DNA of 63,091 nucleotides, filler included, from Reticulomyxa filosa (lineage: Eukaryota; Protista; Foraminifera), in the NCBI GenBank assembly GCA_000512085.1. It is 15 parts of 15 records of this genome, joined end to end, with 100 filler letters (N's around TTAATTAATTAA, not from the genome) between each part and the next. Parts side by side here need not be neighbours in the genome. Positions count along the whole stretch, not along the records: positions 23,439 to 28,388 come from ASPP01003111.1; 14 more parts are not named here. The stretch is one strand, 5' to 3'. Shown here piece after piece: positions 2,357 to 28,564 of this stretch. Each line of letters starts with the position of its first letter. The stretch's first letter is position 1. A program made the position numbers and the translations under genes. The notes beneath the pieces were generated by a model that saw only the letters and a list, made by a program, of their open reading frames with translations, was not told the DNA's origin and searched no databases.

Positions 2357-5300
2357 TTAAAATATACCGCCACGTTGTCCTATAAGTAATTTTTGTTGAA
2401 TTGTTAAGCCTTTTATATTCTTCCAAATGCTATTCTTTATTGATAAACCACTTTGGAGGCCTACTCTCCAAATACAGTTCGCCAAATTAGTTTCTGCCAC
2501 ATCAATTACTTTATTACTCCATAATCGAATCGTCCTATCTTCTGAGTATGATATAATTTTTGATCTATCTGGAGATACTTGAATACCTTTAATTGCTCCG
2601 TTATGTCCTTCTAATAGTTGAATTTGTTTTCCTAAAGATAAGTCCCATATTCGTATAGTTCCATCCTTTGAGTATGAAATAATTTTAGAATTATCCAACG
2701 AAAATTGTACTCCCCATACAGAAGCTGAATGTCCTTCTAATATCTGAAGTTGTTTTCCAGATAATGAGTCCCATAGTCGAATTGTTTTATCACGTGAACA
2801 TGATACGATTCTAGAACCATCAGAAGAAAGTTGTGCTTTATTTACTGAATTAGAGTGTCCTTCTAATGATAGGAGCTGCTTTCCTGAGGATACAGACCAT
2901 ACTCGAATTGTATTATCATTTGAGCATGAAATGATATTAGTAGCATCTGGTACAAATTGTACTTTTAATACAGAATCTGAATGCCCTTCTAATATCTGAA
3001 GTTGTTTTCCAGATGATATATCCCATAATCGAATAGTACGATCTGATGAGCAAGAGACAATGTTAGATCCATCTGGAGAAAATTGTACTCCAGTTACATT
3101 ACCTGAATGTCCATTTAAGAATTGAATTTGTTTTCCGGACACTAGATCCCATATTCGAATAGTTGTATCTTTTGAATAGGATACTATTTTGGAACCATCT
3201 GGTGAAAATTGAACCCCATTTATATTATCCAAGTGTCCTTCTAATATTTTAAGTTGATTTCTAGACTGTACATCCCATATTCGAATTGTTCTATCTGCTG
3301 AATATGATATAATTTTGGAACCATCGAGTGAAAATAATGCTCCACGTACCCAATCTGAATGTCCCTCAAATACTTGAATTTGTCTTCCTGATTGCACATC
3401 CCATAATCGAATTGTTTTATCTACAGAACATGATACCATTTTGGAGCCATCGGGTGAAAATTTCGCTCTTGTCACAATATCTAAATACTCTTCTGCTAAC
3501 TGAATTTTTCTTTCTACAGTTATATCCCATATCCGAATTGTTCCATCATACGAGCATGATAAAAGTTTGGAATCTTTTGGAAAAAATTCCACTCCACTCA
3601 CAAAACTTGAATGTCCTTCTAATACTTGAAGTTGCTTTCCAGATGATACATCCCATATTCGAATTGTATTATCATTTGATCCAGATACAATTTTGGAGCC
3701 ATCAAATGAAAATCTTGCTACATTTATCCAACTTGAATGCCCTTCTAAAACTTGAAATTGTTTTCCAGATAAGAGATCCCATATTCGAATTGTATTATCA
3801 TCTGAATAGGATAATATTTTTGTTTTATCTGGTGATAATTCAACTCCATTTACTCGTTTTGAATGCCCTTCAAATGTTTGGATCAGTTGACTTGAAGAAG
3901 ATATATCCCATATTCGAACAGTTTTGTCTTCTGAACAGGTTATAATTTTTGATTCATTATATAAAAATTTTACCTCTTTTACACTCTTTAAATGTCCTTC
4001 TATTATTTGTAATTGTTTTCCTGACAATACATCCCATATTCGAATTGTTTTATCCGCTGAACATGATACAACTTTAGAACTATCTGATGAAAATTGTACG
4101 GAATGTACTACCTCTAAATGTCCTTTCAATGTTTGAATTTGTTTTCCGGAATGCACATCCCATATTTGAATGGTTTTATCTTTTGAGCGGGATACAATCT
4201 TAGAATCATCTAATGAAAATTGTACATCAATTACACTGTCTGAATGCCCTTCCAATATTTGAATCTGTTGACCTGAAGATACATCCCATATTCGAATTGT
4301 TTTATCTTTTGAAGAGGATACAATTTTAGAACCGTCAGAAGAAAATCGTGCTTTTGTTACATAATCTAAATGTCCTTTTAATAATTGAAGTTGCTTTCCT
4401 GATGACACATCCCATATCTGAATCGTTTTATCTCTTGAATATGATAATATTATTGCTCCATCTGGAGAAAATTGTATTCCACTTACACGTTGTAAATGTC
4501 CTTCCAAATAAGCGTGTTCTCCAAAATAAATTTCATTCATTGATGCATTTGTGAAGTTGACATTGTTTAAACAAGATTGAGCAAAACGAACATGATTTTA
4601 AATTGGCATTACTTAAATCTGTTCCTTCTAGAAATGCATGGTCTAGAATTGCGTGAGGAATTTTAATATTACTCCAATTTCGGTTGTGCATATTGACATT
4701 TGCTGAATTAAGTATAGTAATAGCATTTGCTGCTGCAATACTGACTTGCTCACTGTTTTTTGATGATTCAATGATTCGAAACAATCTTGACTTTAAATTT
4801 ACAAATATTGGATTGATATTGTCATGAATTCTCTCTGCGATAAATTGAATAATTCCTAGTTCTTCATTTAATAATTTATAATTGATAGATAATTTTGGAA
4901 CATAATCTTCAAATTGCTGTTGAAATTGTTGATTATTAATATCATCAACAATATTGGGTTTCCACGAAATGATATCAGACATTATTTTTTGTGCTGTATA
5001 ATATTCTTGACATGATTTATGTAAAAATTGATATTTATTGTCACCAACTCTTCTCAATACATATTTCGCAATACTGTCGCCATTGAAATATTGTTTCCAA
5101 ATATCTTGTGTTTTTACAGCATGAGTTACACAATCATTTGCTTGAAAATCAATTTTTTCATCTTCATTTGATGGATCTAATTTGCTCAAAATTTCGTTAT
5201 TTATATGTGTTATAATATAACTTTCCGTCGCAACTTGATTCCCTTGAATGAACATTTCAAACCCTAAATCTTGACAATATTGTTGAAATGCATATTTAAT

Positions 5301-6110
5301 TTTTTTTGGACTTGTTTGAACTCTTAATTCTGATAATTTATTTGAAATTTCCTTTACATGAATATCAATCCATTGTTCATTAAAGGCTTCATACACTTGT
5401 GCTTTTGATATTTTAGTTCCAATGGAATGTCGTTTCATCAATGATGGCAATACTGTTAAAATCATTCGAAGTAAAAATGGTTCTTCCATCATTTTATTTA
5501 AATTTGGGTAATTTTTTAATGTTTCTTCATATTGCTGTGTTGTCCAATCTAAGTTATTATTCATTTTTACGAATTTGTCAATGTAACCTTTCATTTGTTC
5601 TTTTGAAAAAGGCCATAAATATACCATTGACGTTGTCAGATTATTTGAACCAATTAAAACTTGTTTGATTTCTTCATTATTTAATACATGACTTCGACAA
5701 GTGGCAATAATTTTTGCATTCCATTCATTTAAATTAAATCTATCATAAAAATATTTTCCATTACTATTATTTTTATTATATTTATCAAATATTTCATCAA
5801 AGCCATCTAAAATAAATATAAATGAAATATTTTCACGAATAATGTCAATTATTTCTTTGTTGATTTGTTTCATTTGTAGAGCTTGAGAAATGATTTGTTT
5901 TTCATTTAATTCATTATAGCACTTTGGCAATGAGATGTAAATTGGAATGAATAGCTTAGAATCATTTAGATATGATTTCCATAAAGACTCTTCCAAATGA
6001 CGACAAAATAAACTTTTTCCTGATCCTGATTTTCCTTGTAATATCAAAACTTTTTTTTCTTCTTTTTCTTCCGTTAGTAAATCAAATATATGTTGATGAC
6101 AATCATACAC
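2357..6110 (-). CDS. STAND/NACHT NTPase + pentapeptide repeats + 16 WD40 repeats (NLR-like); 5'-truncated, one frameshift at about 4597
   Basis: Walker A GKSGSGKS, Walker B FILDGFDE, PFLL and FLHKSCQEY motifs, pentapeptide stretch (AILDHAFLEGTDLSNANL), then 16 x 42-aa WD40. Removing one T from the run at 4596-4599 joins the two ORFs and matches the paralog at 48058 (NLxHVRFxQSCLxxVNFTNASMN). Confidence 0.92.
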
Positions 6111-6135
6111 ATTACTATTATTTATATTATTATTA

Positions 6136-6235
6136 NNNNNNNNNNNNNNNNNNNNNNNNNNNNNNNNNNNNNNNNNNNNTTAATTAATTAANNNNNNNNN
6201 NNNNNNNNNNNNNNNNNNNNNNNNNNNNNNNNNNN
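6136..6235. other. Artificial contig spacer (44 N + TTAATTAATTAA + 44 N); also at 7566, 9392, 12948, 14537, 23339, 28389, 31065, 35988, 37255, 43456, 47937, 60272, 61876
   Basis: The same 100-bp structure occurs 14 times. The 12-mer puts stop codons in all six frames. Confidence 0.99.
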
Positions 6236-6262
6236 AAAAAAAAAAAAAAAGATATAATGTAT

Positions 6263-6991
6263 TTAAGTATAATCAATGAAGTATAACTCCAAAGCCATAA
6301 AATATCCAATTACAACGACCGTCGTCAGCCGACGAAAAATGTAGGCGCAAAAATATCGTAAAGCCTCGGCACCTATATTGACACAGTGTAATACTGGTAA
6401 ATAGAAATGGAGGCTATTTCGTTCATCCACGATGAACGACTTCACCAGTCCTGCGATTTCAATGGCGTGATGATATGCCAAGCAACATTCGACGACAAAC
6501 ACATTGCCATCGGTGTGGTCTTCGTTGCTTGCATCATCCGCCCGCCTACTGAACTTTTGCTGCGATGTCGATCGCATCTCTAATTTGAAAAAAGTGCGCA
6601 GACGGCTGACAGGCTCCACCACGACACCGGAATCCACCATTCCAACCACCAACCAAGAATAACCAGGAACCCATAAATCACAATACACACGAATAATCTA
6701 TTTTTCATAACGCTCCAAACTTTTAGTCTTCAAAAAAAAAAACAAAAATAAACAAAAATAAAAAAAATCATTTCTTTGACCTTTCTGGAGTGATGTCGAC
6801 GTTGATTCCAACGAATCACTGGAATCTTGACACGACGACTTTGAAAACCGTTCCGAAAAGGGGAGGAAAAGGTTCATCTTTAACAACGATCTCAACTTTT
6901 TCACTCGAAAAGCATTTTGTTTTTGTGTACAATCAATTATCAAAATTAAATTGATGCCTAGTGGTAATGCAATATTTTTTGAGACGCACAC
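6263..6991 (-). CDS. Hypothetical protein, 5' fragment
   Basis: Higher-GC, coding-like ORFs 6263-6688 and 6698-6991 separated by an AT-rich putative intron. No family recognised. Confidence 0.3.
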
Positions 6992-7702
6992 AAGTGATAT
7001 CTATTTCAAGTGATTGAAAAAGTAATATTTCTTTAATACTATCACATATCATTCGTTATTTAGTCTAGTCAATCCTTTGCTATGTGGATAAAAAATTTTA
7101 ATTTTTTAACACTGGAATTTCTTACATGAGAAGAGAAAAAAAGGATGATAGTGGCATAAACAAAAATTAAAAAATGTGTAAGTTCAATAGAAAGGGAACA
7201 AGAAATATCAAAGTCATTTTTGTATCTACTGAAGTTGCAAAATTTTGTGCTGAGCCAAACGAAATGAAGAGTAAAAAAAAATACATATAAACCCAATTCA
7301 TTGAATGCAAATTCGAGTGATAAATTATTATTGGATGCAATATATATTGTTTTACTACGTGTTTCACAAAAAAATAATAAAAAAATGAAACAAAAATGGA
7401 TTGCATTGTTATTTAAAAAAATAATTGAAAATTTTACTTGGTTGTCAATGAATCAGATGAAGAAGGTGGTAGGCTAACCAACTCAGAGATTCGAGACTCA
7501 AGTTCATTAATTTTATTTTCCAATGTTTGATTGTCTTTGGTCAATTTATTTTTCACATCGAAAAGNNNNNNNNNNNNNNNNNNNNNNNNNNNNNNNNNNN
7601 NNNNNNNNNTTAATTAATTAANNNNNNNNNNNNNNNNNNNNNNNNNNNNNNNNNNNNNNNNNNNNAATAAATAAATATACATATATATATATATGTATAT
7701 TT

Positions 7703-7733
<31 letters not shown>

Positions 7734-7770
7734 CTTTTCTTTTGTTACTCTTTGTTGTCTGCATTTGAAG

Positions 7771-9391
7771 GTATCTTGATTTCATTGAAGGCCCCCATCG
7801 AATGCGCAAAATATTGAAGCGTTACACCGAGTTCCTTCGAGATTACAAGATCAACCAGAAAAAGTTTTTGGAGATGCTTTCTCAAAACAAGTCGGTGCAA
7901 GAATTTATGGAGCTGTGCTATTCCCACAACGGACAACCTCCGTCCTCGCCAAAGGGGCAATTGCCAGGTACCGACCCGCTCTCGTATCCCCCCACTGGCA
8001 ATCAGAGCCGCGCCGATACTCCTGTCTTGCAATCGCCTGCGCGTTCCAAAGAAGAGGCGAATACACAAAATCGTTCTCCGAAAAAAGAGGACGAGTCGGA
8101 TATGAAGGAAGTGGACGCTGTGGTAGCCAATGAAGAGGAGACCGAGGCAGATGAAGACACGCTCAACTTCGAAGACAACAATAAGGAAAAAGACAAAGAC
8201 AAAAATAAAGATGCAGACAATACCAACGACGAGAAGGAAGACAGAGACGAAATCTCGGAAAAAGACGCCAACGGAGAGAATGATACGACTTTGGAGTTAC
8301 TCCAAGATGTGATGCAATCCTTCCAGAGCAACATGCGCAGCCTTGCATCCGAGAAAAGCGACGAAATGGAGTCACCTCTATATTTCATCGAAGAAAAGTA
8401 TGCAGCGGAAAAGGATACAGATAGCAAAGCGGCAGAGATCACAGACAGCAGTATGTTGATATTGCCCGAGAGCAGTGAAAGAAAGAGGCAGTCACAAGTT
8501 GAAACTGCAAGCACGTCTCAAACACTTGTAGAGCCAAAAGAAGAAAAAGAAAAGGAAGAGGAAAAAGGAGAAAAAAAAAGAAAACCAAAGAGAACAAGAA
8601 AACAACAAAGAAGAAGAAGAAGAAGAAGAAGAAGAAGAAGAAAATGAAGCGTTACCATTTGAAAAAGAAGAAGACATAACCGATTTAATTGTACGCAAAA
8701 ACGACAAAACGATAGGCCTTGTGCAAAGAATGTCGAGGGTGTTGAAGTCAGGAGACATCTTTCACTCTTCGTCCACGTACAATTGCGGTACTGTCAGCGG
8801 TTTGAACCGAGACGACGGTATTATCCTGCTCTGCAACACCGCAATGTACTTTTTCTACCATATCGAATTTGATTCAAAAAATTGTTAAGTTTTGTGTGTG
8901 CATGTGCAAGATCAAACTTTAAAAGTGTCGACATATTGTTTTTTAGCTGAAAACAGATGAGTGGAATGTATATGTGTATATATGTATATATGTATATATG
9001 TATATATGTATATACATTGAAAAGGTGAATTGAAAGAGATTCAAACCAAGACACGAAAGGGAATCGAGTTTACGACATCCTTTGACATGACTAATCCACA
9101 ATTGGGACCATTGCTGACAATAACAAAGAAACCAAAAAAAGGCAAATCTGAAACCAATAGCATCCCCTTTGAATAGCATGAACCTTGGCCACGATACAGT
9201 CAGCGTAAAGGCATCAGAAGAAGACGCCATGGAACATAAGGAACCCTTGAGATTTACATATGAAAGCTTGCGTGAAGTTTACAAGCGACAGTATCAGCTG
9301 TCAGCAAATTGCCATTGAGTTTTTCTGTTCAATGCTCCAACTTTTTGCTCATCTTTGCAAAGCGCGAGTTTAGTTGTTTTTTTTAAAAAAA
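7771..9391 (+). CDS. BEACH-domain family protein (ALFY/WDFY3/Lvs-like), fragment containing the BEACH-type PH domain
   Basis: YLDFIEGPHRMRKILKR (cf. EGPxRMRKK preceding PH-BEACH), then an acidic linker. After an A-run frameshift at 8571-8579 it reads YNCGTVSGLNRDDGIILLCNTAMYFF. After an intron it reads RFTYESLREVYKRQYQLSA(IAIEFF) (cf. FAYEDIKEVHKRRYLLQPIAVEVF). Confidence 0.82.
8609..8643 (+). repeat. (GAA)n microsatellite encoding poly-Glu in the BEACH-protein linker
   Basis: About 11 tandem GAA units read directly from the sequence. Confidence 0.9.
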
Positions 9392-23438: not shown

Positions 23439-26400
23439 AACAGGTATCGTCGAGTTTATTGGTACTGTCGAATTTGACGAAGGAACATGGGTCGGCTTGA
23501 TCTTGGATGAAATATCCCCCAATGCGACCGATGGCATCATCAGCGGAAAGTTATACTTTCAAACCCAACCGCACAGAGCATTCTTCACAAAGCAAAAGCA
23601 TTTGACAGAGAATCTGGGTTCCATTCTCAACACGCCATTGATAATGCTGGGAAGAAACACCGCTCAAAATGACTTGGCGTTTAAAATCGGAGACCGAATT
23701 CAATTGGCGGAAGGTGGCACAGGCACTGTGAAATATATCGGCTCCGACGAGGATAGCAAAGAAATAGAACCGATCGTTGGAGTGGAATTGGACACGTGGG
23801 ATCCCAATGCCAATGATGGGATATTTAAAGGCAAGGAGTTGTTTCAAGTCAAAATGGGCAGAGGTCTGTTCACACGTCGCCAATCGATACTCCAGGTATT
23901 GCCAGACAAGCCCAACGATACGCGCCATTTGAAAGACATGCCAAAGATTGGAAACCGTGTGAAACTGCATTCGGGAGAAGAGGCTGTCGTGGACAGTATT
24001 GGCGACGATATCACTGTCACATTGCTGTTCTCGTCCACGCGAAGTGATATCCGACGGACGGTAAAGTTGACCGATTTGAGTGAAAACTTGGGCAAATTTT
24101 ATGACAAGCAATACACCGTCTTGCCAAACAAACACTTGGAATTGATCGTCGGTGATCATGTTCGTTTGATCCGTGGCAAAACAGGCAAAATCAAATATAT
24201 TGGCCGAGTGGGCAATGAAGGCGAAATGATCGGACTTGAAATGGATTCGTGGACTCCGAGTGGACACACTGGCAAAGGGTATTTCATTGCTCCCAATGGC
24301 CGTGGACACTTTGCAAAACGCTCCGATATCGTCGAAATCATTAAACCTCCGGAAAAATCGGAACAAGCAAAACTTCAAATCCAAAGACATCGACAAATGC
24401 TCAATTTGCAAAATAAAGTATACAAAATCGAACAATTGGAAAAAAAGCAGCGCTTGGGAATGGACTTAGACTCGGAACAAAACCAATTTGTTCAGCGCAA
24501 AACGCTGCTGCAAAGACAATTGAAAGACTTGACCGAGGCGTTCAATCAAAACTATCCTTTCGTCGAAATTGATGAAGTCGTCAAACGCGAGGCAAGTGCG
24601 GGATCGAATGGATATGGATCGCTTGTGATCCAAGAGTCATTGTCCGTAAACACCGGCGATCGAGTCGTCCTGGACAGTGGCGACATTGGCAAAGTGATAT
24701 TTATTGGGTCGGTGAGCTTTGACAATCGACAAATGCTTGGAATCCTCTTGGATGAGTGGTCTCCCAATGGACACGATGGAACAGTGGATGGCACGCAGTA
24801 CTTTGAAGCGCCCGAGGGAAGAGGCCTATTGGTACCCTTTGACTCCGTCGTGGGGTTGTATGATGAGTACGGAGAGGTGCAAAAGGCCGCACCCAAAAAA
24901 AAGATCAAAAAAAATGATCAAAAACGAGGATCCGTGGAATTGAAGCCAGTCATGGAAGAAGAAGACGATGACGACGATGAAGATTACAAAAATGAATCGG
25001 AAAGGCAATCGATAATAACAAAAATTTTTGAGGGAGATAAGACAGTGTATCCTGATTTGCCAAAAGTGGGCGAAAAAGTAAACGTTGGAGGTGTGTGTGT
25101 GGGAAGGAAAAAAAAAAAAAAAAAAGAACTTTCATATACGATTTTGTCGTATTGAATGATAGATATGCGGTGTTGTAATGTTTTTGTGTGTTTTGGCAAC
25201 AGGAAAATCGGGAGTGGTAAAATATGTCGGAAAAACAGAATTCAGCAAGGAAGAACCAATGATTGGAATTGAATTGGAAACGTGGAGTGCCAATGCCACG
25301 GATGGGTCGTTCATGGGGACGAAATACTTTGAGTCTGCTCCAGGCAAAGGATACTTTCTCCGTAAAGATTCGTATGCCTCTTTAAATGATATGATGAACA
25401 ATAGCAAAGCCAAGTCTATTCTGCAGCAAGGCTCTTTGGCTTTGGAAAACTTTGATTCCAAAGCCTTGGGAGTGTACTTTGAGGAAGATGACCACGTGGT
25501 GACCAGCGAGGGCCACAGTGGGAAAGTTGCGTTTATTGGAAAAGTCAAATTTAGCACAAAGGAAATGGTCGGCTTACTTTTGGACGAATGGGACCCCAAT
25601 GGACATAACGGAAGGGTGCGCGGTGAGAAATACTTTGACGCCTTGGACGGATTTGGCTGGTTTGTGCCCGTGGACTGTGTTATCGAAAAAATTACCGACG
25701 ACGAGGAATGGAAAAACAAAAGAGAAGAAACGCAACGCCAAAAATCGAAAAACAAATACCGTCCAAAGATTGAGATTGGACAACGTGTGCAAATCAAAGG
25801 AGGACTTCGTGGCTTGGTTCGTTTCTATGGAAAAACAGCCTTTGACGATAGCAAATGGGTTGGATTGGAATTGGATAACTGGCATTACAATGCACATGAC
25901 GGCACTGTCGATGGCAACAACTACTTTACTGCGAACAAAGGACGTGGATTCTTTGTTAGGCCAGAGAACATTTCTGTTGTGCTGAGAAGAGAAGACGAAA
26001 AAAAAGACGTGGAGTCATTGACAGTGATGCCAGAAATTGGAGATCGTGTGCGAACTGTTCGTGGCAAGACTGGGATTGTTCGTTTCATTGGACCTGTCAG
26101 CTTCTCCAGTGGAGTGCTCATTGGTCTTGAACTGGATCGCTGGAGTGCTAACGGCAATAACGGCTCTGTCGACGATTCCCCTTATTTCAGTTGTCCGTTG
26201 GGTCGTGGCTGCTTTACCTCTTTGTCTCATTTGATCGAAAACTTGGGATCCACTTTACCCACTCAGTCCGAATCAAATGAAAATGATTCCAAGACATCCA
26301 CCGAAAATTCAAAACAAGACTCATCATCATTACGACTCGGAGACAAGGTCCAATTACCTCAAGGAAAAGTGGGCACTGTTCGTTTTATTGGAACGACTGA

Positions 26401-28339
26401 AGCGACTGGAAATGATGAAATTATTGGCTTTGAGTTTGTTTTGTTTTGTTTTGACATTCAAACTTGTCTCAAACTATTCTTTTTATTAAATCGAACATGC
26501 TTTGTATATAACTGTTGGAAATACTGATCAGATTGGAGTCATGGGACGCCAATGCCACCGATGGCTCTCTTGGAGGAAAACGCTTATTTGAAGCGCAAAA
26601 TGGAAGAGGCTATTTTACTCGTCGAAAATCAATAGCCGATGTGGTAAGGCCGCAAATCAAAAAGGATGGCTATGCCAAATTAAAGGGGTTGCAAAGCATG
26701 GTCAACTTCAACGGTCGAGTGGTAAAGCTAATTGAATACGTGCCCGAAAAACAAAGATGGAAAGTGCGATTGATTGGAGGGAAAAAGAAAGATAAGAAAA
26801 GTTTGGGAGTGAAAGAAGAAAATTTGACACCAACATTGGACTGGGAAATACTTCCTGCTCTTGGCTCCAGCAGCACGCACTTGACGAGAGCGCCCATGAT
26901 TGGTGATCGTGTGCGCACCAAAAATGGAAAAACTGGAATTGTCCGATTTGTGGGAGAAGCAGAGTTTGCGAAAAACCAGATTACGATTGGGTTGGAATTG
27001 GATGAGTGGAGTCCATCAGCACACAATGGTACATTGGACAAAGAGTATTTCAAATGCAAAGAGGGACACGGTTACTTTACGAGTTTGGAAAATTTGATTG
27101 CCAATTTAGGGCAATTTGATGAAAACCAACCCAACGCTCCACCTTTGCAAAAATCTGAATTTAGAGTTGGTGACAAAGTCAGATTGGCCCGCGGAAAAAT
27201 TGGAGAAGTCAAATTCATTGGAGTCACCGATTTCAGCAAAGGTGAGGAAATTGTTGGACTGGAATTGTCCCAATGGACTCAAGGAGCACACGACGGAAAG
27301 GTGAGTGGTAAGGAATATTTCAAAACAAAGAAAGGCCGTGGTTATTTCACTCGCAAGGCATCCGTGGCAAGTATTGTGTTATCAGATGCGGTGCTCAATA
27401 GTGAGAAAAATGCAGACAATGATGATACTAACAACAACAACAATGATAAGAAAGGCGTCAGCAAAGCACGAATTCGTCGTGAAGCTAACAAAATGAAGAG
27501 CAAAATCCATCAGATATTGGTATTGGAAATGCGCGAAGCGAAAGGAGAAAAATTAACCCCTTATCAAATAGACGAAATCAAACAGAAAGCAAAATATTTG
27601 CAAAGACTAAACGATTTGGAAAATGGCAACATTGATCTTGAAGCGGAAGATAGGGAAAAAAAGGAACAAGACAAAAAGAAACGCAAGCATTTGTTAGAGA
27701 GAAAAGCCACAATGGATTTGACCGCAAAGAAATGGAAAGTCCCCGTTAAAGTGGATGATTTGGTGAAATTGGAAAATGGAGACACTGGCGTGGTGAAATG
27801 GATTGGCAAAGTAGCATTTCTTCCCGACGACATCATTGGGTTACTGATGGACCAAAGCAATCCTAATTACCACACCGGCGAATTAGAAGGCAAAGAATAT
27901 TTCAAAGCGCCAAATCATCGAGGATACTTTGCATTGGCCGAAGAAATCGAAGAAAACATGGGCACGACAAAGCGTTCTCGTCGTCGAAAATCTGTCAATT
28001 TGACCGAAGAGAATAAGAGCGAGAAAAATGTAAAGATTGGAGATGTTGTGCAGACAGCCGAAGGATCTGGGAAAGTTGTTTGGATGGGCACAGTGACTGC
28101 AGGAGACGAAGAGAAAACAAATGAAGAAATGCTTGGCGTGGAATTGGAATCCTTTAGTGCCAATGCCAATGACGGATCGGTTGAGGGAACAAAGTACTTT
28201 GATAGCAAACAAGGACGTGGTATGTTTGTACGTACGCAGTCGGTTCAACTCGATCTGAATTCCGATTTTGCAAAAAGTCAACTGGAAAATGCGGTAATGC
28301 CAGGAGATCGAGTCAGAACAGACAGAGGCTATACAGGAG
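23439..28339 (+). CDS. Giant multi-CAP-Gly protein (at least 13 domains plus one partial), truncated at both contig ends
   Basis: Repeated (I/V)GDRV..G.V.(F/Y)IG...GxELDxW....DG...G..YF....GxGxF. Three ORFs are joined in frame by GT-AG introns 25091-25202 (phase 1) and 26434-26531 (phase 2). Confidence 0.95.
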
Positions 28340-28564
28340 TTTTGAAACTATATTAACTGATTCTTTTTTTTTCACCAAAAAAAAAAAANNNNNNNNNNNN
28401 NNNNNNNNNNNNNNNNNNNNNNNNNNNNNNNNTTAATTAATTAANNNNNNNNNNNNNNNNNNNNNNNNNNNNNNNNNNNNNNNNNNNNAGAAAAAAAAAA
28501 AAAAAAAAAAAATCATCCAAGAGACAAAAAAACAAACAAACAAAACAAAAACGACGAAAATTAG

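What the first reader, a model, noticed from the sequence alone, without database searches (positions are those of the whole stretch)
23439..28339. The CAP-Gly array is a higher-order super-repeat of about 8 modules plus a coiled coil
Seen: module identities recur in the same order with a period of roughly 2.6-2.9 kb. Pairs: HLTENLG / HLIENLG; IQLAEG...WDPNANDG..ELF..GRGLFTRRQSI / VQLPQG...WDANATDG..RLF..GRGYFTRRKSI; HLKDMPKIGNRV..ENLGKF / HLTRAPMIGDRV..ANLGQF; VGDHVRLIRGKTG / VGDKVRLARGKIG; coiled coil / coiled coil; VVLDSGDIGKV / VKLENGDTGVV; IELETWSANATDGS..GTKYFES / VELESFSANANDGS..GTKYFDS. Inference: an old block duplication kept with position-specific identity, like titin or nebulin super-repeats, possibly acting as a ruler matched to a tubulin polymer geometry.
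Basis: partly seen in the sequence, partly recalled or inferred. Interest (0 to 1): 0.8.

Follow-up and report, generated by a model that had tools for sequence, protein, structure and literature searches.

The report
Giant CAP-Gly array, no 8-module ruler
This is an internal piece of a giant microtubule-binding-type gene of the foraminifer Reticulomyxa filosa, a chain of about 30 CAP-Gly modules. Two module types alternate along it and one four-module block was copied long ago, but it is not a regular 8-module super-repeat.

Summary
The piece is the whole 4950-base Reticulomyxa filosa contig that carries the annotated "hypothetical protein RFI_03278, partial". It holds three exons and two short GT-AG introns on the + strand, cut at both ends. 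It encodes 15 CAP-Gly modules (D1 and D15 cut, D3 degenerate), two helical linkers after D4 and D12, and a 55-aa unassigned insert between D10 and D11.

The best profile alignment of the two halves is D1-D6 on D9-D14.

The i/i+8 rule is mostly a side effect of a stronger order: two module types alternate (P = 0.0001). With that alternation kept, the colinear pairing is not significant (P = 0.12). Specific signal exists only for D1-D4 plus linker against D9-D12 plus linker.

Colinear relatives complete D15 and D16. These resemble D11/D12 plus a third helical linker, not D7/D8. Helical linkers follow modules U4, D4, D12 and D16, a spacing of 7, 8 and 4 modules.

So there was an old block duplication inside a two-type array, not a titin- or nebulin-like ruler. 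None of the 13 complete modules has the canonical GKNDG lysine. Function is inferred only.

The parts
23440..25090 (+). Exon 1 (cut at the contig start): modules D1 (partial) to D5 and the first 9 residues of D6. It ends with the first base of a split Gly codon.
   Evidence: Open frame and GT donor at 25091. CAP_GLY 161 bits. 1499 of 1525 residues of the annotated RFI_03278 match my model.
25091..25202 (+). Intron 1 (112 nt, GT..AG, phase 1), inside module D6.
   Evidence: Splicing restores a complete CAP-Gly module D6. The loci L001 and L002 have an intron at the same place.
25203..26433 (+). Exon 2: the rest of D6, then D7, D8, D9 and the first half of D10.
   Evidence: CAP_GLY 220 bits. 67% and 61% aa identity to L001 and L002.
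26434..26531 (+). Intron 2 (98 nt, GT..AG, phase 2), inside module D10.
   Evidence: Splicing gives ..IIGFE-LESWDANATDG.., in register with D2. L001 and L002 have an intron at the same place.
26532..28338 (+). Exon 3: the second half of D10, the insert, D11, D12, helical linker 2, D13, D14 and the first 14 residues of D15.
   Evidence: CAP_GLY 195 bits. 59% and 55% aa identity to L001 and L002.
28339..28388 (+). Start of intron 3 (GT donor). The contig ends in a homopolymer run.
   Evidence: A stop codon follows shortly after the GT. In L001 and L002 an intron at this point is followed by the rest of D15.
23440..23643 (+). D1 (N-terminus cut), A type, tail HLTENLGSIL.
   Evidence: Sister of D9 in the tree.
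23683..23928 (+). D2, B type, tail FTRRQSI.
   Evidence: Its best partner is D10 (Z 2.1).
23944..24096 (+). D3, a degenerate module. The first strands and the A-type tail LSENLGKF are kept, and the ligand-loop region is lost.
   Evidence: No HMM hit. The same degenerate form occurs in L002, L003 (P0028), P0029 and P0033.
24145..24369 (+). D4, B type, followed by helical linker 1.
24331..24648 (+).
   Evidence: Orthologue L003 z = 17. Against linker 2, z = 1.9-6.6. Aligned on linker 2 in the profile alignment.
24649..24888 (+). D5. Its closest relative is D7 (Z 3.3), not D13 (Z 1.1).
25063..25414 (+). D6 (spans intron 1), B type.
25481..25720 (+). D7.
25772..26011 (+). D8.
26033..26272 (+). D9, A type, tail HLIENLGSTL.
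26333..26673 (+). D10 (spans intron 2), B type, tail FTRRKSI.
26650..26832 (+). Conserved 55-60-aa insert between D10 and D11, predicted beta-rich, with no family assigned. It is absent between D2 and D3.
   Evidence: 23 invariant columns across 5 sequences. No Pfam match. AF2 model pLDDT 52, strands only. Atlas hits are unnamed clusters.
26896..27135 (+). D11, A type, tail LIANLGQF.
27163..27405 (+). D12, B type, followed by helical linker 2.
   Evidence: The AF2 model matches solved CAP-Gly structures.
27364..27747 (+). Three predicted helices lie at about 27448-27711.
   Evidence: AF2 helices 102-132, 139-160 and 165-189 of the model, pLDDT up to 90. Orthologues z = 10-30.
27748..27987 (+). 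D13, with an A-like tail IEENMG.
28033..28284 (+). D14, B type.
28297..28338 (+). D15, first 14 residues only. Its closest matches are the starts of D9 and D11.
   Evidence: 83% and 71% identity to D9 and D11. Completed in L001 and L002 as an A-type module.

Best explanation
The piece is an internal fragment of one of at least three paralogous giant CAP-Gly array genes of the foraminifer Reticulomyxa filosa. It is the annotated RFI_03278.

Overlapping colinear loci indicate that the full protein has about 30 CAP-Gly modules: U1-U7 upstream and D1-D23. It also has three or four helical linkers of 60-190 aa and one small unassigned beta-rich insert.

The main higher-order order is a two-module alternation. 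Odd modules are mostly A type, with a C-terminal tail h-x-E-N-L/M-G. Even modules are B type, with the tail F-T/A-R-R/K-x-S-I/V.

On top of this sits at least one old duplication of a block of four modules plus the helical linker, D1-D4+H1 against D9-D12+H2. It may extend over two more modules. A further 'A-B-helical linker' copy (D15-D16+H3) follows only four modules later. The 8-module offset is therefore the distance between two copies of a block, not a constant period.

Inferred, not shown: the array is a multivalent binder of tubulin or microtubule-associated tails. The helical linkers would serve as spacers or oligomerisation modules, giving high-avidity lattice binding, bundling or cross-linking in an organism with extreme microtubule dynamics.
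For: - Identity and organism: P0031 (RFI_03278, partial, R. filosa, contig of 4950 bases) matches my model at 1499 of 1525 residues.
- Family: CAP_GLY is the only Pfam family. The AF2 model of D12-H2-D13 superposes on CLIP-170 and p150Glued CAP-Gly structures, with TM by target 0.80-0.86 and rmsd 2.1-2.4 A.
- Colinear relatives share the same introns: L002 at 55-61% aa over the whole window, L001 at 59-67% over exons 2-3, L003 and L004 at 37-40%.
- Positional orthology is starred for nearly every module.
- Alternation: same-parity minus different-parity mean Z is 1.15, P = 0.0001. The leading eigenvector changes sign with parity at 16 of 17 positions. A-type tails occur at U6, D1, D9, D11, D13 and D15, in degenerate D3 and, read off the translations, in D17 (L001 after its intron; P0009). 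All are odd positions.
- Block duplication: D1-D4 and D9-D12 are reciprocal best four-module frames, mean Z 1.99. D1+D9 are sisters.
- Helical-linker similarity across positions is weak: z = 1.9-6.6 for linker 1 against linker 2.
- Break of the period: D15/D16+H3. D12-D16 Z 2.4 and D9-D15 Z 2.6.
Against: - The domain tree leaves most deep forks open, and AU tests cannot reject D5+D13 or D7+D15. The extent of the duplicated block is therefore uncertain.
- The shift-8 mean Z is the highest of the well-sampled even shifts, and six of its seven pairs are positive.
- The module count of about 30 is a composite of different loci and organisms, not one assembled gene.
- Coiled-coil formation was not tested. 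AF2 shows three helices with a conserved Gly turn, which could be a helical hairpin.
- None of the 13 complete modules keeps the Lys of the GKNDG signature, so tubulin-tail binding cannot be assumed.
- No RNA or read evidence for the splice model was available.
Confidence: 0.6

Rival explanations
1. One reading: a true 8-module super-repeat. An ancestral D1-D8 block plus coiled coil was duplicated as a whole to give D9-D16. Position-specific identity was kept because the period matches a tubulin polymer geometry, and later remodelling blurred D7/D8 against D15/D16.
For: - The best hhalign path is the colinear one, D1-D6 on D9-D14 (score 624 against 526 for the next path).
- Shift 8 has the highest mean Z within D1-D16 among the well-sampled shifts (shift 12, three pairs only, is 1.18), and six of its seven pairs are positive.
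- P = 0.003 against free permutations.
- AU tests do not reject D5+D13 or D7+D15.
- D6 and D14 share the best 80-nt DNA match, 74%.
Against: - P = 0.12 when module parity is kept.
- D5-D8 has no preferred partner.
- D15 is A type and D16 is followed by a third helical linker, so the next unit starts after 4-6 modules, not 8.
- Upstream, the helical stretch after U4 lies 7 modules before the one after D4, and U5-U7 do not match D5-D8.
- There are only two copies at most, so there is no periodic ruler.
Confidence: 0.2
2. No block duplication at all. The array grew by many duplications of single A-B pairs. The D1/D9 and D2/D10 likeness and the recurring helical linkers reflect subtype convergence, gene conversion or chance among about 30 related modules.
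For: - The parity effect explains most of the shift-8 signal.
- Other strong pairs lie at other shifts: D5-D7 3.3, D9-D15 2.6, D12-D16 2.4, U1-D21 3.3, D4-U5 2.9.
- Linker-to-linker similarity across positions is weak, z mostly 1-6.
Against: - Three adjacent elements agree in register (D1/D9 Z 2.9, D2/D10 Z 2.1, D4/D12 Z 1.0), and the tail subtype is shared by D3/D11.
- D1-D4 and D9-D12 are reciprocal best among all frames.
- The profile alignment runs colinearly through linkers and helices.
Confidence: 0.12

Closest known systems
Reticulomyxa filosa paralogues RFI_05929 and RFI_05930 (contig ASPP01005087.1) and the four gene models of contig ASPP01005602.1 (including RFI_06886 and RFI_06887)
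   Same: - Colinear module by module, 55-67% aa identity.
- Same three intron positions, same degenerate D3, same insert and same helical linkers.
   Different: They are separate loci of the same genome. They extend further: L002 adds U1-U7 and D15-D16, and L001 adds D15-D21. They are annotated as several short 'hypothetical proteins' although the reading frame continues across short introns.
CLIP-170 / CLIP-115 / CLIPR-59 (CAP-Gly linker proteins)
   Same: - The CAP-Gly fold: rmsd 2.1-2.4 A and 33-39% identity to CLIP-170 CAP-Gly 1 and 2.
- CAP-Gly modules combined with helical segments.
   Different: - Those proteins have two CAP-Gly domains, one long dimeric coiled coil and C-terminal zinc knuckles (my knowledge of the family).
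- Here there are about 30 modules and short helical linkers of 60-190 aa inside the array.
- The window has no zinc knuckle.
- The GKNDG lysine is absent from all 13 complete modules, and one extra residue with a conserved Trp precedes the motif.
CYLD (three CAP-Gly domains)
   Same: Several CAP-Gly modules with diverged ligand loops. CYLD CAP-Gly3 is among the fold matches.
   Different: CYLD has a deubiquitinase catalytic domain and only three modules, some of which bind ubiquitin or NEMO rather than tubulin (PMC8511506, title and abstract). No catalytic domain is seen here.
Titin and nebulin super-repeats
   Same: A long array of one small domain type in which module identity depends on position and is conserved between gene copies.
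   Different: Those have many consecutive copies of a fixed 7- or 11-module unit matched to a filament period (my knowledge). Here there are at most two copies of a 4-6-module block, irregular linker spacing (7, 8 and 4 modules), and a dominant period of 2.

Membership tests
CAP-Gly domain (Pfam PF01302) | Sequence match above the curated gathering score | tested here: met
   161, 220 and 195 bits for the three exons against a cut-off of 26.5, with four stretches each. 13 module hits with my own HMM.
CAP-Gly domain (Pfam PF01302) | CAP-Gly fold | tested here: met
   The AF2 model of D12-linker-D13 gives Foldseek matches to CLIP-170, p150Glued and CLIP-115 CAP-Gly structures, TM by target 0.76-0.86, rmsd 2.1-3.6 A, probability 1.00. 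pLDDT of the modules is only 65-83.
CAP-Gly domain (Pfam PF01302) | GKNDG signature loop (Lys and Asn that contact EEY/F tails; my knowledge of the family) | tested here: not met
   The loop reads NATDG, NANDG, SGHTG, NGHDG, NGHNG, NAHDG, NGNNG, SAHNG, GAHDG or NYHTG. No module has the Lys, and one extra residue precedes the loop. See the alignment to CLIP-170 CAP-Gly2 and CEP350.
CAP-Gly domain (Pfam PF01302) | Binding of C-terminal EEY/F motifs of alpha-tubulin, EB1 or CLIP-170 | not testable with these tools
   Needs binding assays.
Super-repeat array (titin/nebulin type) | Three or more consecutive copies of a multi-module unit at constant period | tested here: not met
   Helical linkers follow U4, D4, D12 and D16, a spacing of 7, 8 and 4 modules. 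D15/D16 are of the D11/D12 kind.
Super-repeat array (titin/nebulin type) | Module i is closer to module i+period than to other modules of the same type | tested here: inconclusive
   Met for D1/D9 and D2/D10. Not met for D5 (best partner D7), D6, D7 or D8. Parity-preserving permutation P = 0.12. AU tests have no power.
Super-repeat array (titin/nebulin type) | Period matched to the repeat of a partner polymer | not testable with these tools
   Needs structural work on microtubule complexes.
CLIP-170 family (+TIP linker proteins) | N-terminal tandem CAP-Gly, long central coiled coil, C-terminal zinc knuckles and an EEY/F tail | tested here: not met
   The window is an internal array with helical stretches of at most about 130 aa. 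Only CAP_GLY was found by Pfam. The termini of this gene are not on the contig.

The most novel reading that the evidence does not exclude
The two-module A-B unit, not the 8-module block, is the functional repeat. One A-B pair would engage one alpha/beta-tubulin dimer, or two neighbouring tails. The roughly 30-module protein, joined by its helical linkers, would then lie along or between protofilaments as a multivalent clamp. Such a clamp would help foraminifera switch tubulin rapidly between microtubules and stored polymer forms. The non-canonical ligand loop (no GKNDG lysine) would mean a ligand other than the classical EEY/F tail.
Probability: 0.1. Interest if true: 0.8.

Novelty: new variant of a known kind. 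Interest (0 to 1): 0.4.

Why it matters
Known CAP-Gly proteins carry one to three modules. A protein family with about 30 modules, present in at least three copies in Reticulomyxa and in related uncultured organisms, would be an unusual microtubule-associated protein. Reticulomyxa is known for very fast microtubule assembly, disassembly and transport.

For the scan, the main result is a correction. The visible 8-module recurrence is largely explained by a simple A/B alternation plus one old block duplication. The idea of a molecular ruler rests on no more than two partial copies.

The analysis also shows that the public annotation cuts single giant genes into several 'hypothetical proteins' and mis-splices two modules.

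Tried and rejected
- The look-up of sequencing runs listed no run, so splice junctions and expression could not be checked with reads and read laying was not used.
- A self-BLAST of the whole model returned only the identity hit. It was replaced by half-against-half BLAST and hhalign.
- The domain tree of 79 modules over 81 columns resolves orthologues but not the deep forks. AU tests on D5+D13 and D7+D15 reject nothing.
- The insert gave no Pfam hit even at E = 10. Its AF2 model has pLDDT 52, too poor for a fold search. The Atlas returned only unnamed clusters, with recognition below the useful level.
- Literature searches for CAP-Gly together with Reticulomyxa, foraminifera, Rhizaria or super-repeat found nothing relevant. 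The R. filosa genome paper is not held. The Filoreta preprint does not mention CAP-Gly.
- A period of 4 (D2, D6, D10 and D14 share NA[TN]DG) was considered. It is not supported overall: shift-4 mean Z is 0.56.
- The large representative search was not used, because relatives were found by the word search.
- The spliced protein was joined only inside scripts, for self-comparison. All database searches were made exon by exon, by reference.
Full report
**What is on the piece.**
- The range 23439-28388 contains no N. Its + strand carries one reading frame that changes phase twice.
- Both changes have GT..AG boundaries. Intron 1 is 25091-25202 (phase 1, split Gly codon). Intron 2 is 26434-26531 (phase 2, split Glu codon).
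- Splicing at these points restores two complete CAP-Gly modules, D6 and D10.
- The frame is open at the left edge. At the right it ends at a GT donor at 28339, 50 bases before the contig stops in a homopolymer run.
- Pfam finds only CAP_GLY, at 161, 220 and 195 bits for the three exons against a cut-off of 26.5.
- ORFs on the minus strand all lie inside this coding region. I take them as chance frames.

**Inventory of the encoded fragment.**
- There are 15 modules. D1 lacks its start, D15 has only its first 14 residues, and D3 is degenerate.
- A helical linker follows D4 and another follows D12.
- A conserved 55-60-aa stretch lies between D10 and D11. It has no counterpart between D2 and D3.

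**Whose gene it is.**
- The word search with a relative returned P0031, 'hypothetical protein RFI_03278, partial [Reticulomyxa filosa]'. It is 1525 aa and sits on a contig of exactly 4950 bases.
- It is identical to my spliced model at 1499 of 1525 residues. It differs only at the N-terminal start, at the two junctions and at the C-terminal end, where it reads 5 residues into intron 3.
- At intron 1 the deposited model keeps 18 intron-encoded residues and skips 13 residues of D6. At intron 2 it keeps 3 extra residues, inside D10.
- The window is therefore a contig of the public R. filosa assembly, and the gene is already deposited, without a description.

**Relatives.**
- Two further R. filosa contigs are colinear with the window, module by module.
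- L002 (ASPP01005602.1) covers the whole window at 55-61% aa identity. It adds about 950 aa upstream (modules U1-U7), then D15 and D16 downstream.
- L001 (ASPP01005087.1, RFI_05929 plus RFI_05930) covers exons 2-3 at 59-67% and continues to D21.
- Both have introns at the same three places as the window.
- In both, the several annotated 'genes' lie head to tail on one strand. Where I read the junctions, they are separated by short introns that split CAP-Gly modules, so each contig carries part of one giant gene.
- More distant colinear relatives (37-41%) come from metagenome assemblies: L003, L004 and P0033.
- Put together, the order is U1-U7, D1-D23, about 30 modules. Helical stretches follow U4, D4, D12 and D16.
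- This count is a composite of several loci, not one assembled molecule.

**Check of the observation.**
- Start-to-start offsets are 2.6-3.1 kb (coordinates).
- Half-against-half BLAST gives the colinear alignment as best, 213 bits at an offset of 839 aa. Other registers reach 184-199 bits.
- I built profiles by anchoring L001-L004 on the window protein. hhalign then gives D1-D6 on D9-D14 as the best path (score 624 over 560 columns). It passes through the tails, the degenerate D3 on D11, and both helical linkers.
- Other registers follow at 526, 419 and 411. Per column, some equal or exceed the best path.

**Is i/i+8 specific?**
- With single sequences, only D2/D10 is close to a reciprocal best pair. 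D5 is closest to D7, and D9 to D11.
- To reduce noise I averaged normalised scores over all orthologues of each position and double-centred the matrix.
- All even shifts are positive and all odd shifts negative. This is the first main finding.
- Same-parity pairs exceed different-parity pairs by 1.15 Z units (P = 0.0001). The leading eigenvector of the matrix changes sign with parity at 16 of 17 positions.
- The two types are also visible by eye in the tails. Odd modules U6, D1, D3, D9, D11, D13, D15 and D17 end in h-x-E-N-L/M-G. Even modules end in F-T/A-R-R/K-x-S-I/V.
- Within D1-D16, shift 8 has mean Z 1.15. The pairs are D1-D9 2.9, D2-D10 2.1, D4-D12 1.0, D5-D13 1.1, D6-D14 0.8, D7-D15 0.6 and D8-D16 -0.4.
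- Shift 2 has 0.87 and shift 6 has 0.67.
- The colinear assignment beats free permutations (P = 0.003). It ranks 17th of 144 when odd modules are permuted among odd and even among even (P = 0.12).

**What does stand out.**
- I slid four-module frames along the whole array. D1-D4 and D9-D12 are each other's best partners (mean Z 1.99).
- D5-D8 has no preferred partner. D13-D16 comes fourth at 0.52.
- In the maximum-likelihood tree of 79 modules, almost every position forms a starred clade across loci.
- D1 and D9 are sisters (93/76) inside a starred clade with D11 (95/87).
- Tail subtypes agree in register. D1/D9 have NLGS[TI]L and D3/D11 have NLG[KQ][FY].
- The helical linkers are strongly conserved between orthologues (z = 10-30). 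They are only weakly alike between positions: linker 1 against 2, z = 1.9-6.6; 2 against 3, 1.8-6.0; 1 against 3, 1.0-3.7.

**What breaks the period.**
- The window stops 14 residues into D15. Those residues are most like the starts of D9 and D11.
- L001, L002 and L004 complete D15 as an A-type module with tail ENMG, ESMG or KNFG.
- It is followed by a B-type D16 and a third helical linker.
- D12-D16 (Z 2.4) and D9-D15 (Z 2.6) are among the strongest pairs in the matrix.
- A period of 8 predicts that D15/D16 resemble D7/D8 and that no linker follows D16. Neither is seen.
- Upstream, the helical stretch after U4 lies 7 modules before the one after D4. U5-U7 do not resemble D5-D8.
With 81 columns the deep forks are open. 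AU tests reject neither D5+D13 (p = 0.26) nor D7+D15 (p = 0.32).

**Structure and family.**
- An AF2 model of D12-linker-D13, built on a four-sequence alignment, has mean pLDDT 69.
- Its modules match solved CAP-Gly domains of CLIP-170, p150Glued and CLIP-115, with TM by target up to 0.86 and rmsd 2.1-2.4 A.
- The linker is predicted as three helices of 31, 22 and 25 residues, with pLDDT up to 90. A conserved Gly-containing turn follows the first helix.
- 'Coiled coil' is therefore plausible but untested. A helical hairpin is equally possible.
- By sequence, the closest solved relatives are CEP350, CLIP-170 and CLIP-115.
- In those alignments the GKNDG signature is replaced by NATDG, NGHDG, GAHDG, SAHNG and similar. 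None of the 13 complete modules has the lysine. One extra residue, usually after a conserved Trp, precedes the loop.
- That this lysine matters for EEY/F tail binding is my knowledge of the family, not a result obtained here.

**The insert.**
- The stretch between D10 and D11 is conserved in L001, L002, L004 and the EukProt protein P0023, with 23 invariant columns.
- It has no Pfam match.
- The AF2 model is all-beta but unreliable, pLDDT 52.
- The Atlas gives unnamed clusters only.

**Most likely mechanism.**
- Shown: a very long array of CAP-Gly folds with two alternating subtypes, position-specific conservation over long evolutionary distance, and interspersed helical modules.
- Inferred: multivalent, high-avidity binding to microtubules or to acidic tails of tubulin or associated proteins. 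The helical modules would act as spacers or oligomerisation points.
- Open: the ligand, given the altered signature loop.
- The ruler idea has no support beyond the existence of an array.

**Novelty.**
- The gene is public but undescribed.
- I found no paper on multi-CAP-Gly arrays in foraminifera or Rhizaria in the searchable library.
- I class it as a new variant of a known kind: a CAP-Gly microtubule-associated protein with an unusual module number and grammar.

**Limits.**
- No reads were available.
- The spliced model was joined only inside scripts. All database searches were made exon by exon, by reference.

Noticed in passing
window 25091-25202 and 26434-26531: The deposited model RFI_03278 uses other splice junctions. 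At intron 1 it keeps 18 intron-encoded residues and drops 13 residues of module D6. At intron 2 it keeps 3 extra residues inside D10. At its C-terminal end it reads 5 residues into intron 3. The GT-AG junctions given here restore both modules and coincide with introns in the two paralogous contigs.
   Followed up: yes
L001:3174-3248 and L002 (gene models 73-1823, 1951-2901, 3006-4510, 4565-8422): The R. filosa annotation splits single giant CAP-Gly genes into two (RFI_05929 and RFI_05930) and four neighbouring 'hypothetical proteins'. Where I read them (RFI_05929/05930 on L001, and 4474-4667 on L002), the gaps between models are short introns inside CAP-Gly modules (D15 and D6).
   Followed up: partly
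L002:2877-2880 and L002:3839-3845: There are two frame changes with no room for an intron, one inside module D1 and one inside helical linker 1 of the L002 paralogue. They are either homopolymer sequencing errors of the assembly or real frameshifts (a pseudogene).
   Followed up: no
window 26650-26832; L001:1501-1800; L002:6076-6330; L004:1288-1560; P0023:318-405: A conserved 55-60-aa insert between D10 and D11 has the motif Y-A-K-L-K-G-L ... N-G-K-x-V-K ... R-W-K-V-K-L ... L-G-V-K-E-E-N-L. It has no Pfam family. AF2 predicts beta strands only, at low confidence. It may be a small SH3- or chromo-like barrel.
   Followed up: partly
window 23944-24096 (D3); also L002, P0028, P0029, P0033: Module D3 is degenerate in the same way in five loci, including distant ones. 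The first strands and the ENLG tail are kept and the ligand-loop half is replaced. The 'broken' module is therefore old and retained, perhaps as a spacer.
   Followed up: partly
P0033 (ENA metagenome protein, 1694 aa), residues 1366-1694: A distant relative is colinear from U6 to D11. It then carries a near-identical second copy of its own D5, followed by about 260 residues with several long hydrophobic stretches that look like membrane spans. This is either a membrane-anchored CAP-Gly array or a chimeric contig.
   Followed up: no
P0023 (EukProt 78044_1), residues 1-130 and 470-600: This relative repeats a non-CAP-Gly N-terminal motif plus a D6-like and a D9-like module twice. That is a different, lineage-specific block duplication in the same family.
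   Followed up: no
all complete modules of the window: The CAP-Gly signature GKNDG is never canonical. Lys is replaced by Ala, Gly or Tyr, and an extra residue after a conserved Trp precedes the loop.
   Followed up: partly
P0002, P0007, P0017 (metagenome and metatranscriptome proteins, 570-910 aa): A second, more distant family of CAP-Gly arrays has 6-9 modules. Nearly all have B-type tails (FTKRS/FTKPS), without the A/B alternation, insert or helical linkers.
   Followed up: no
window 28370-28388 and the end of L002: Both contigs stop in A/T homopolymer runs. This fits assembly breaks at homopolymers and explains why these genes are in pieces.
   Followed up: no
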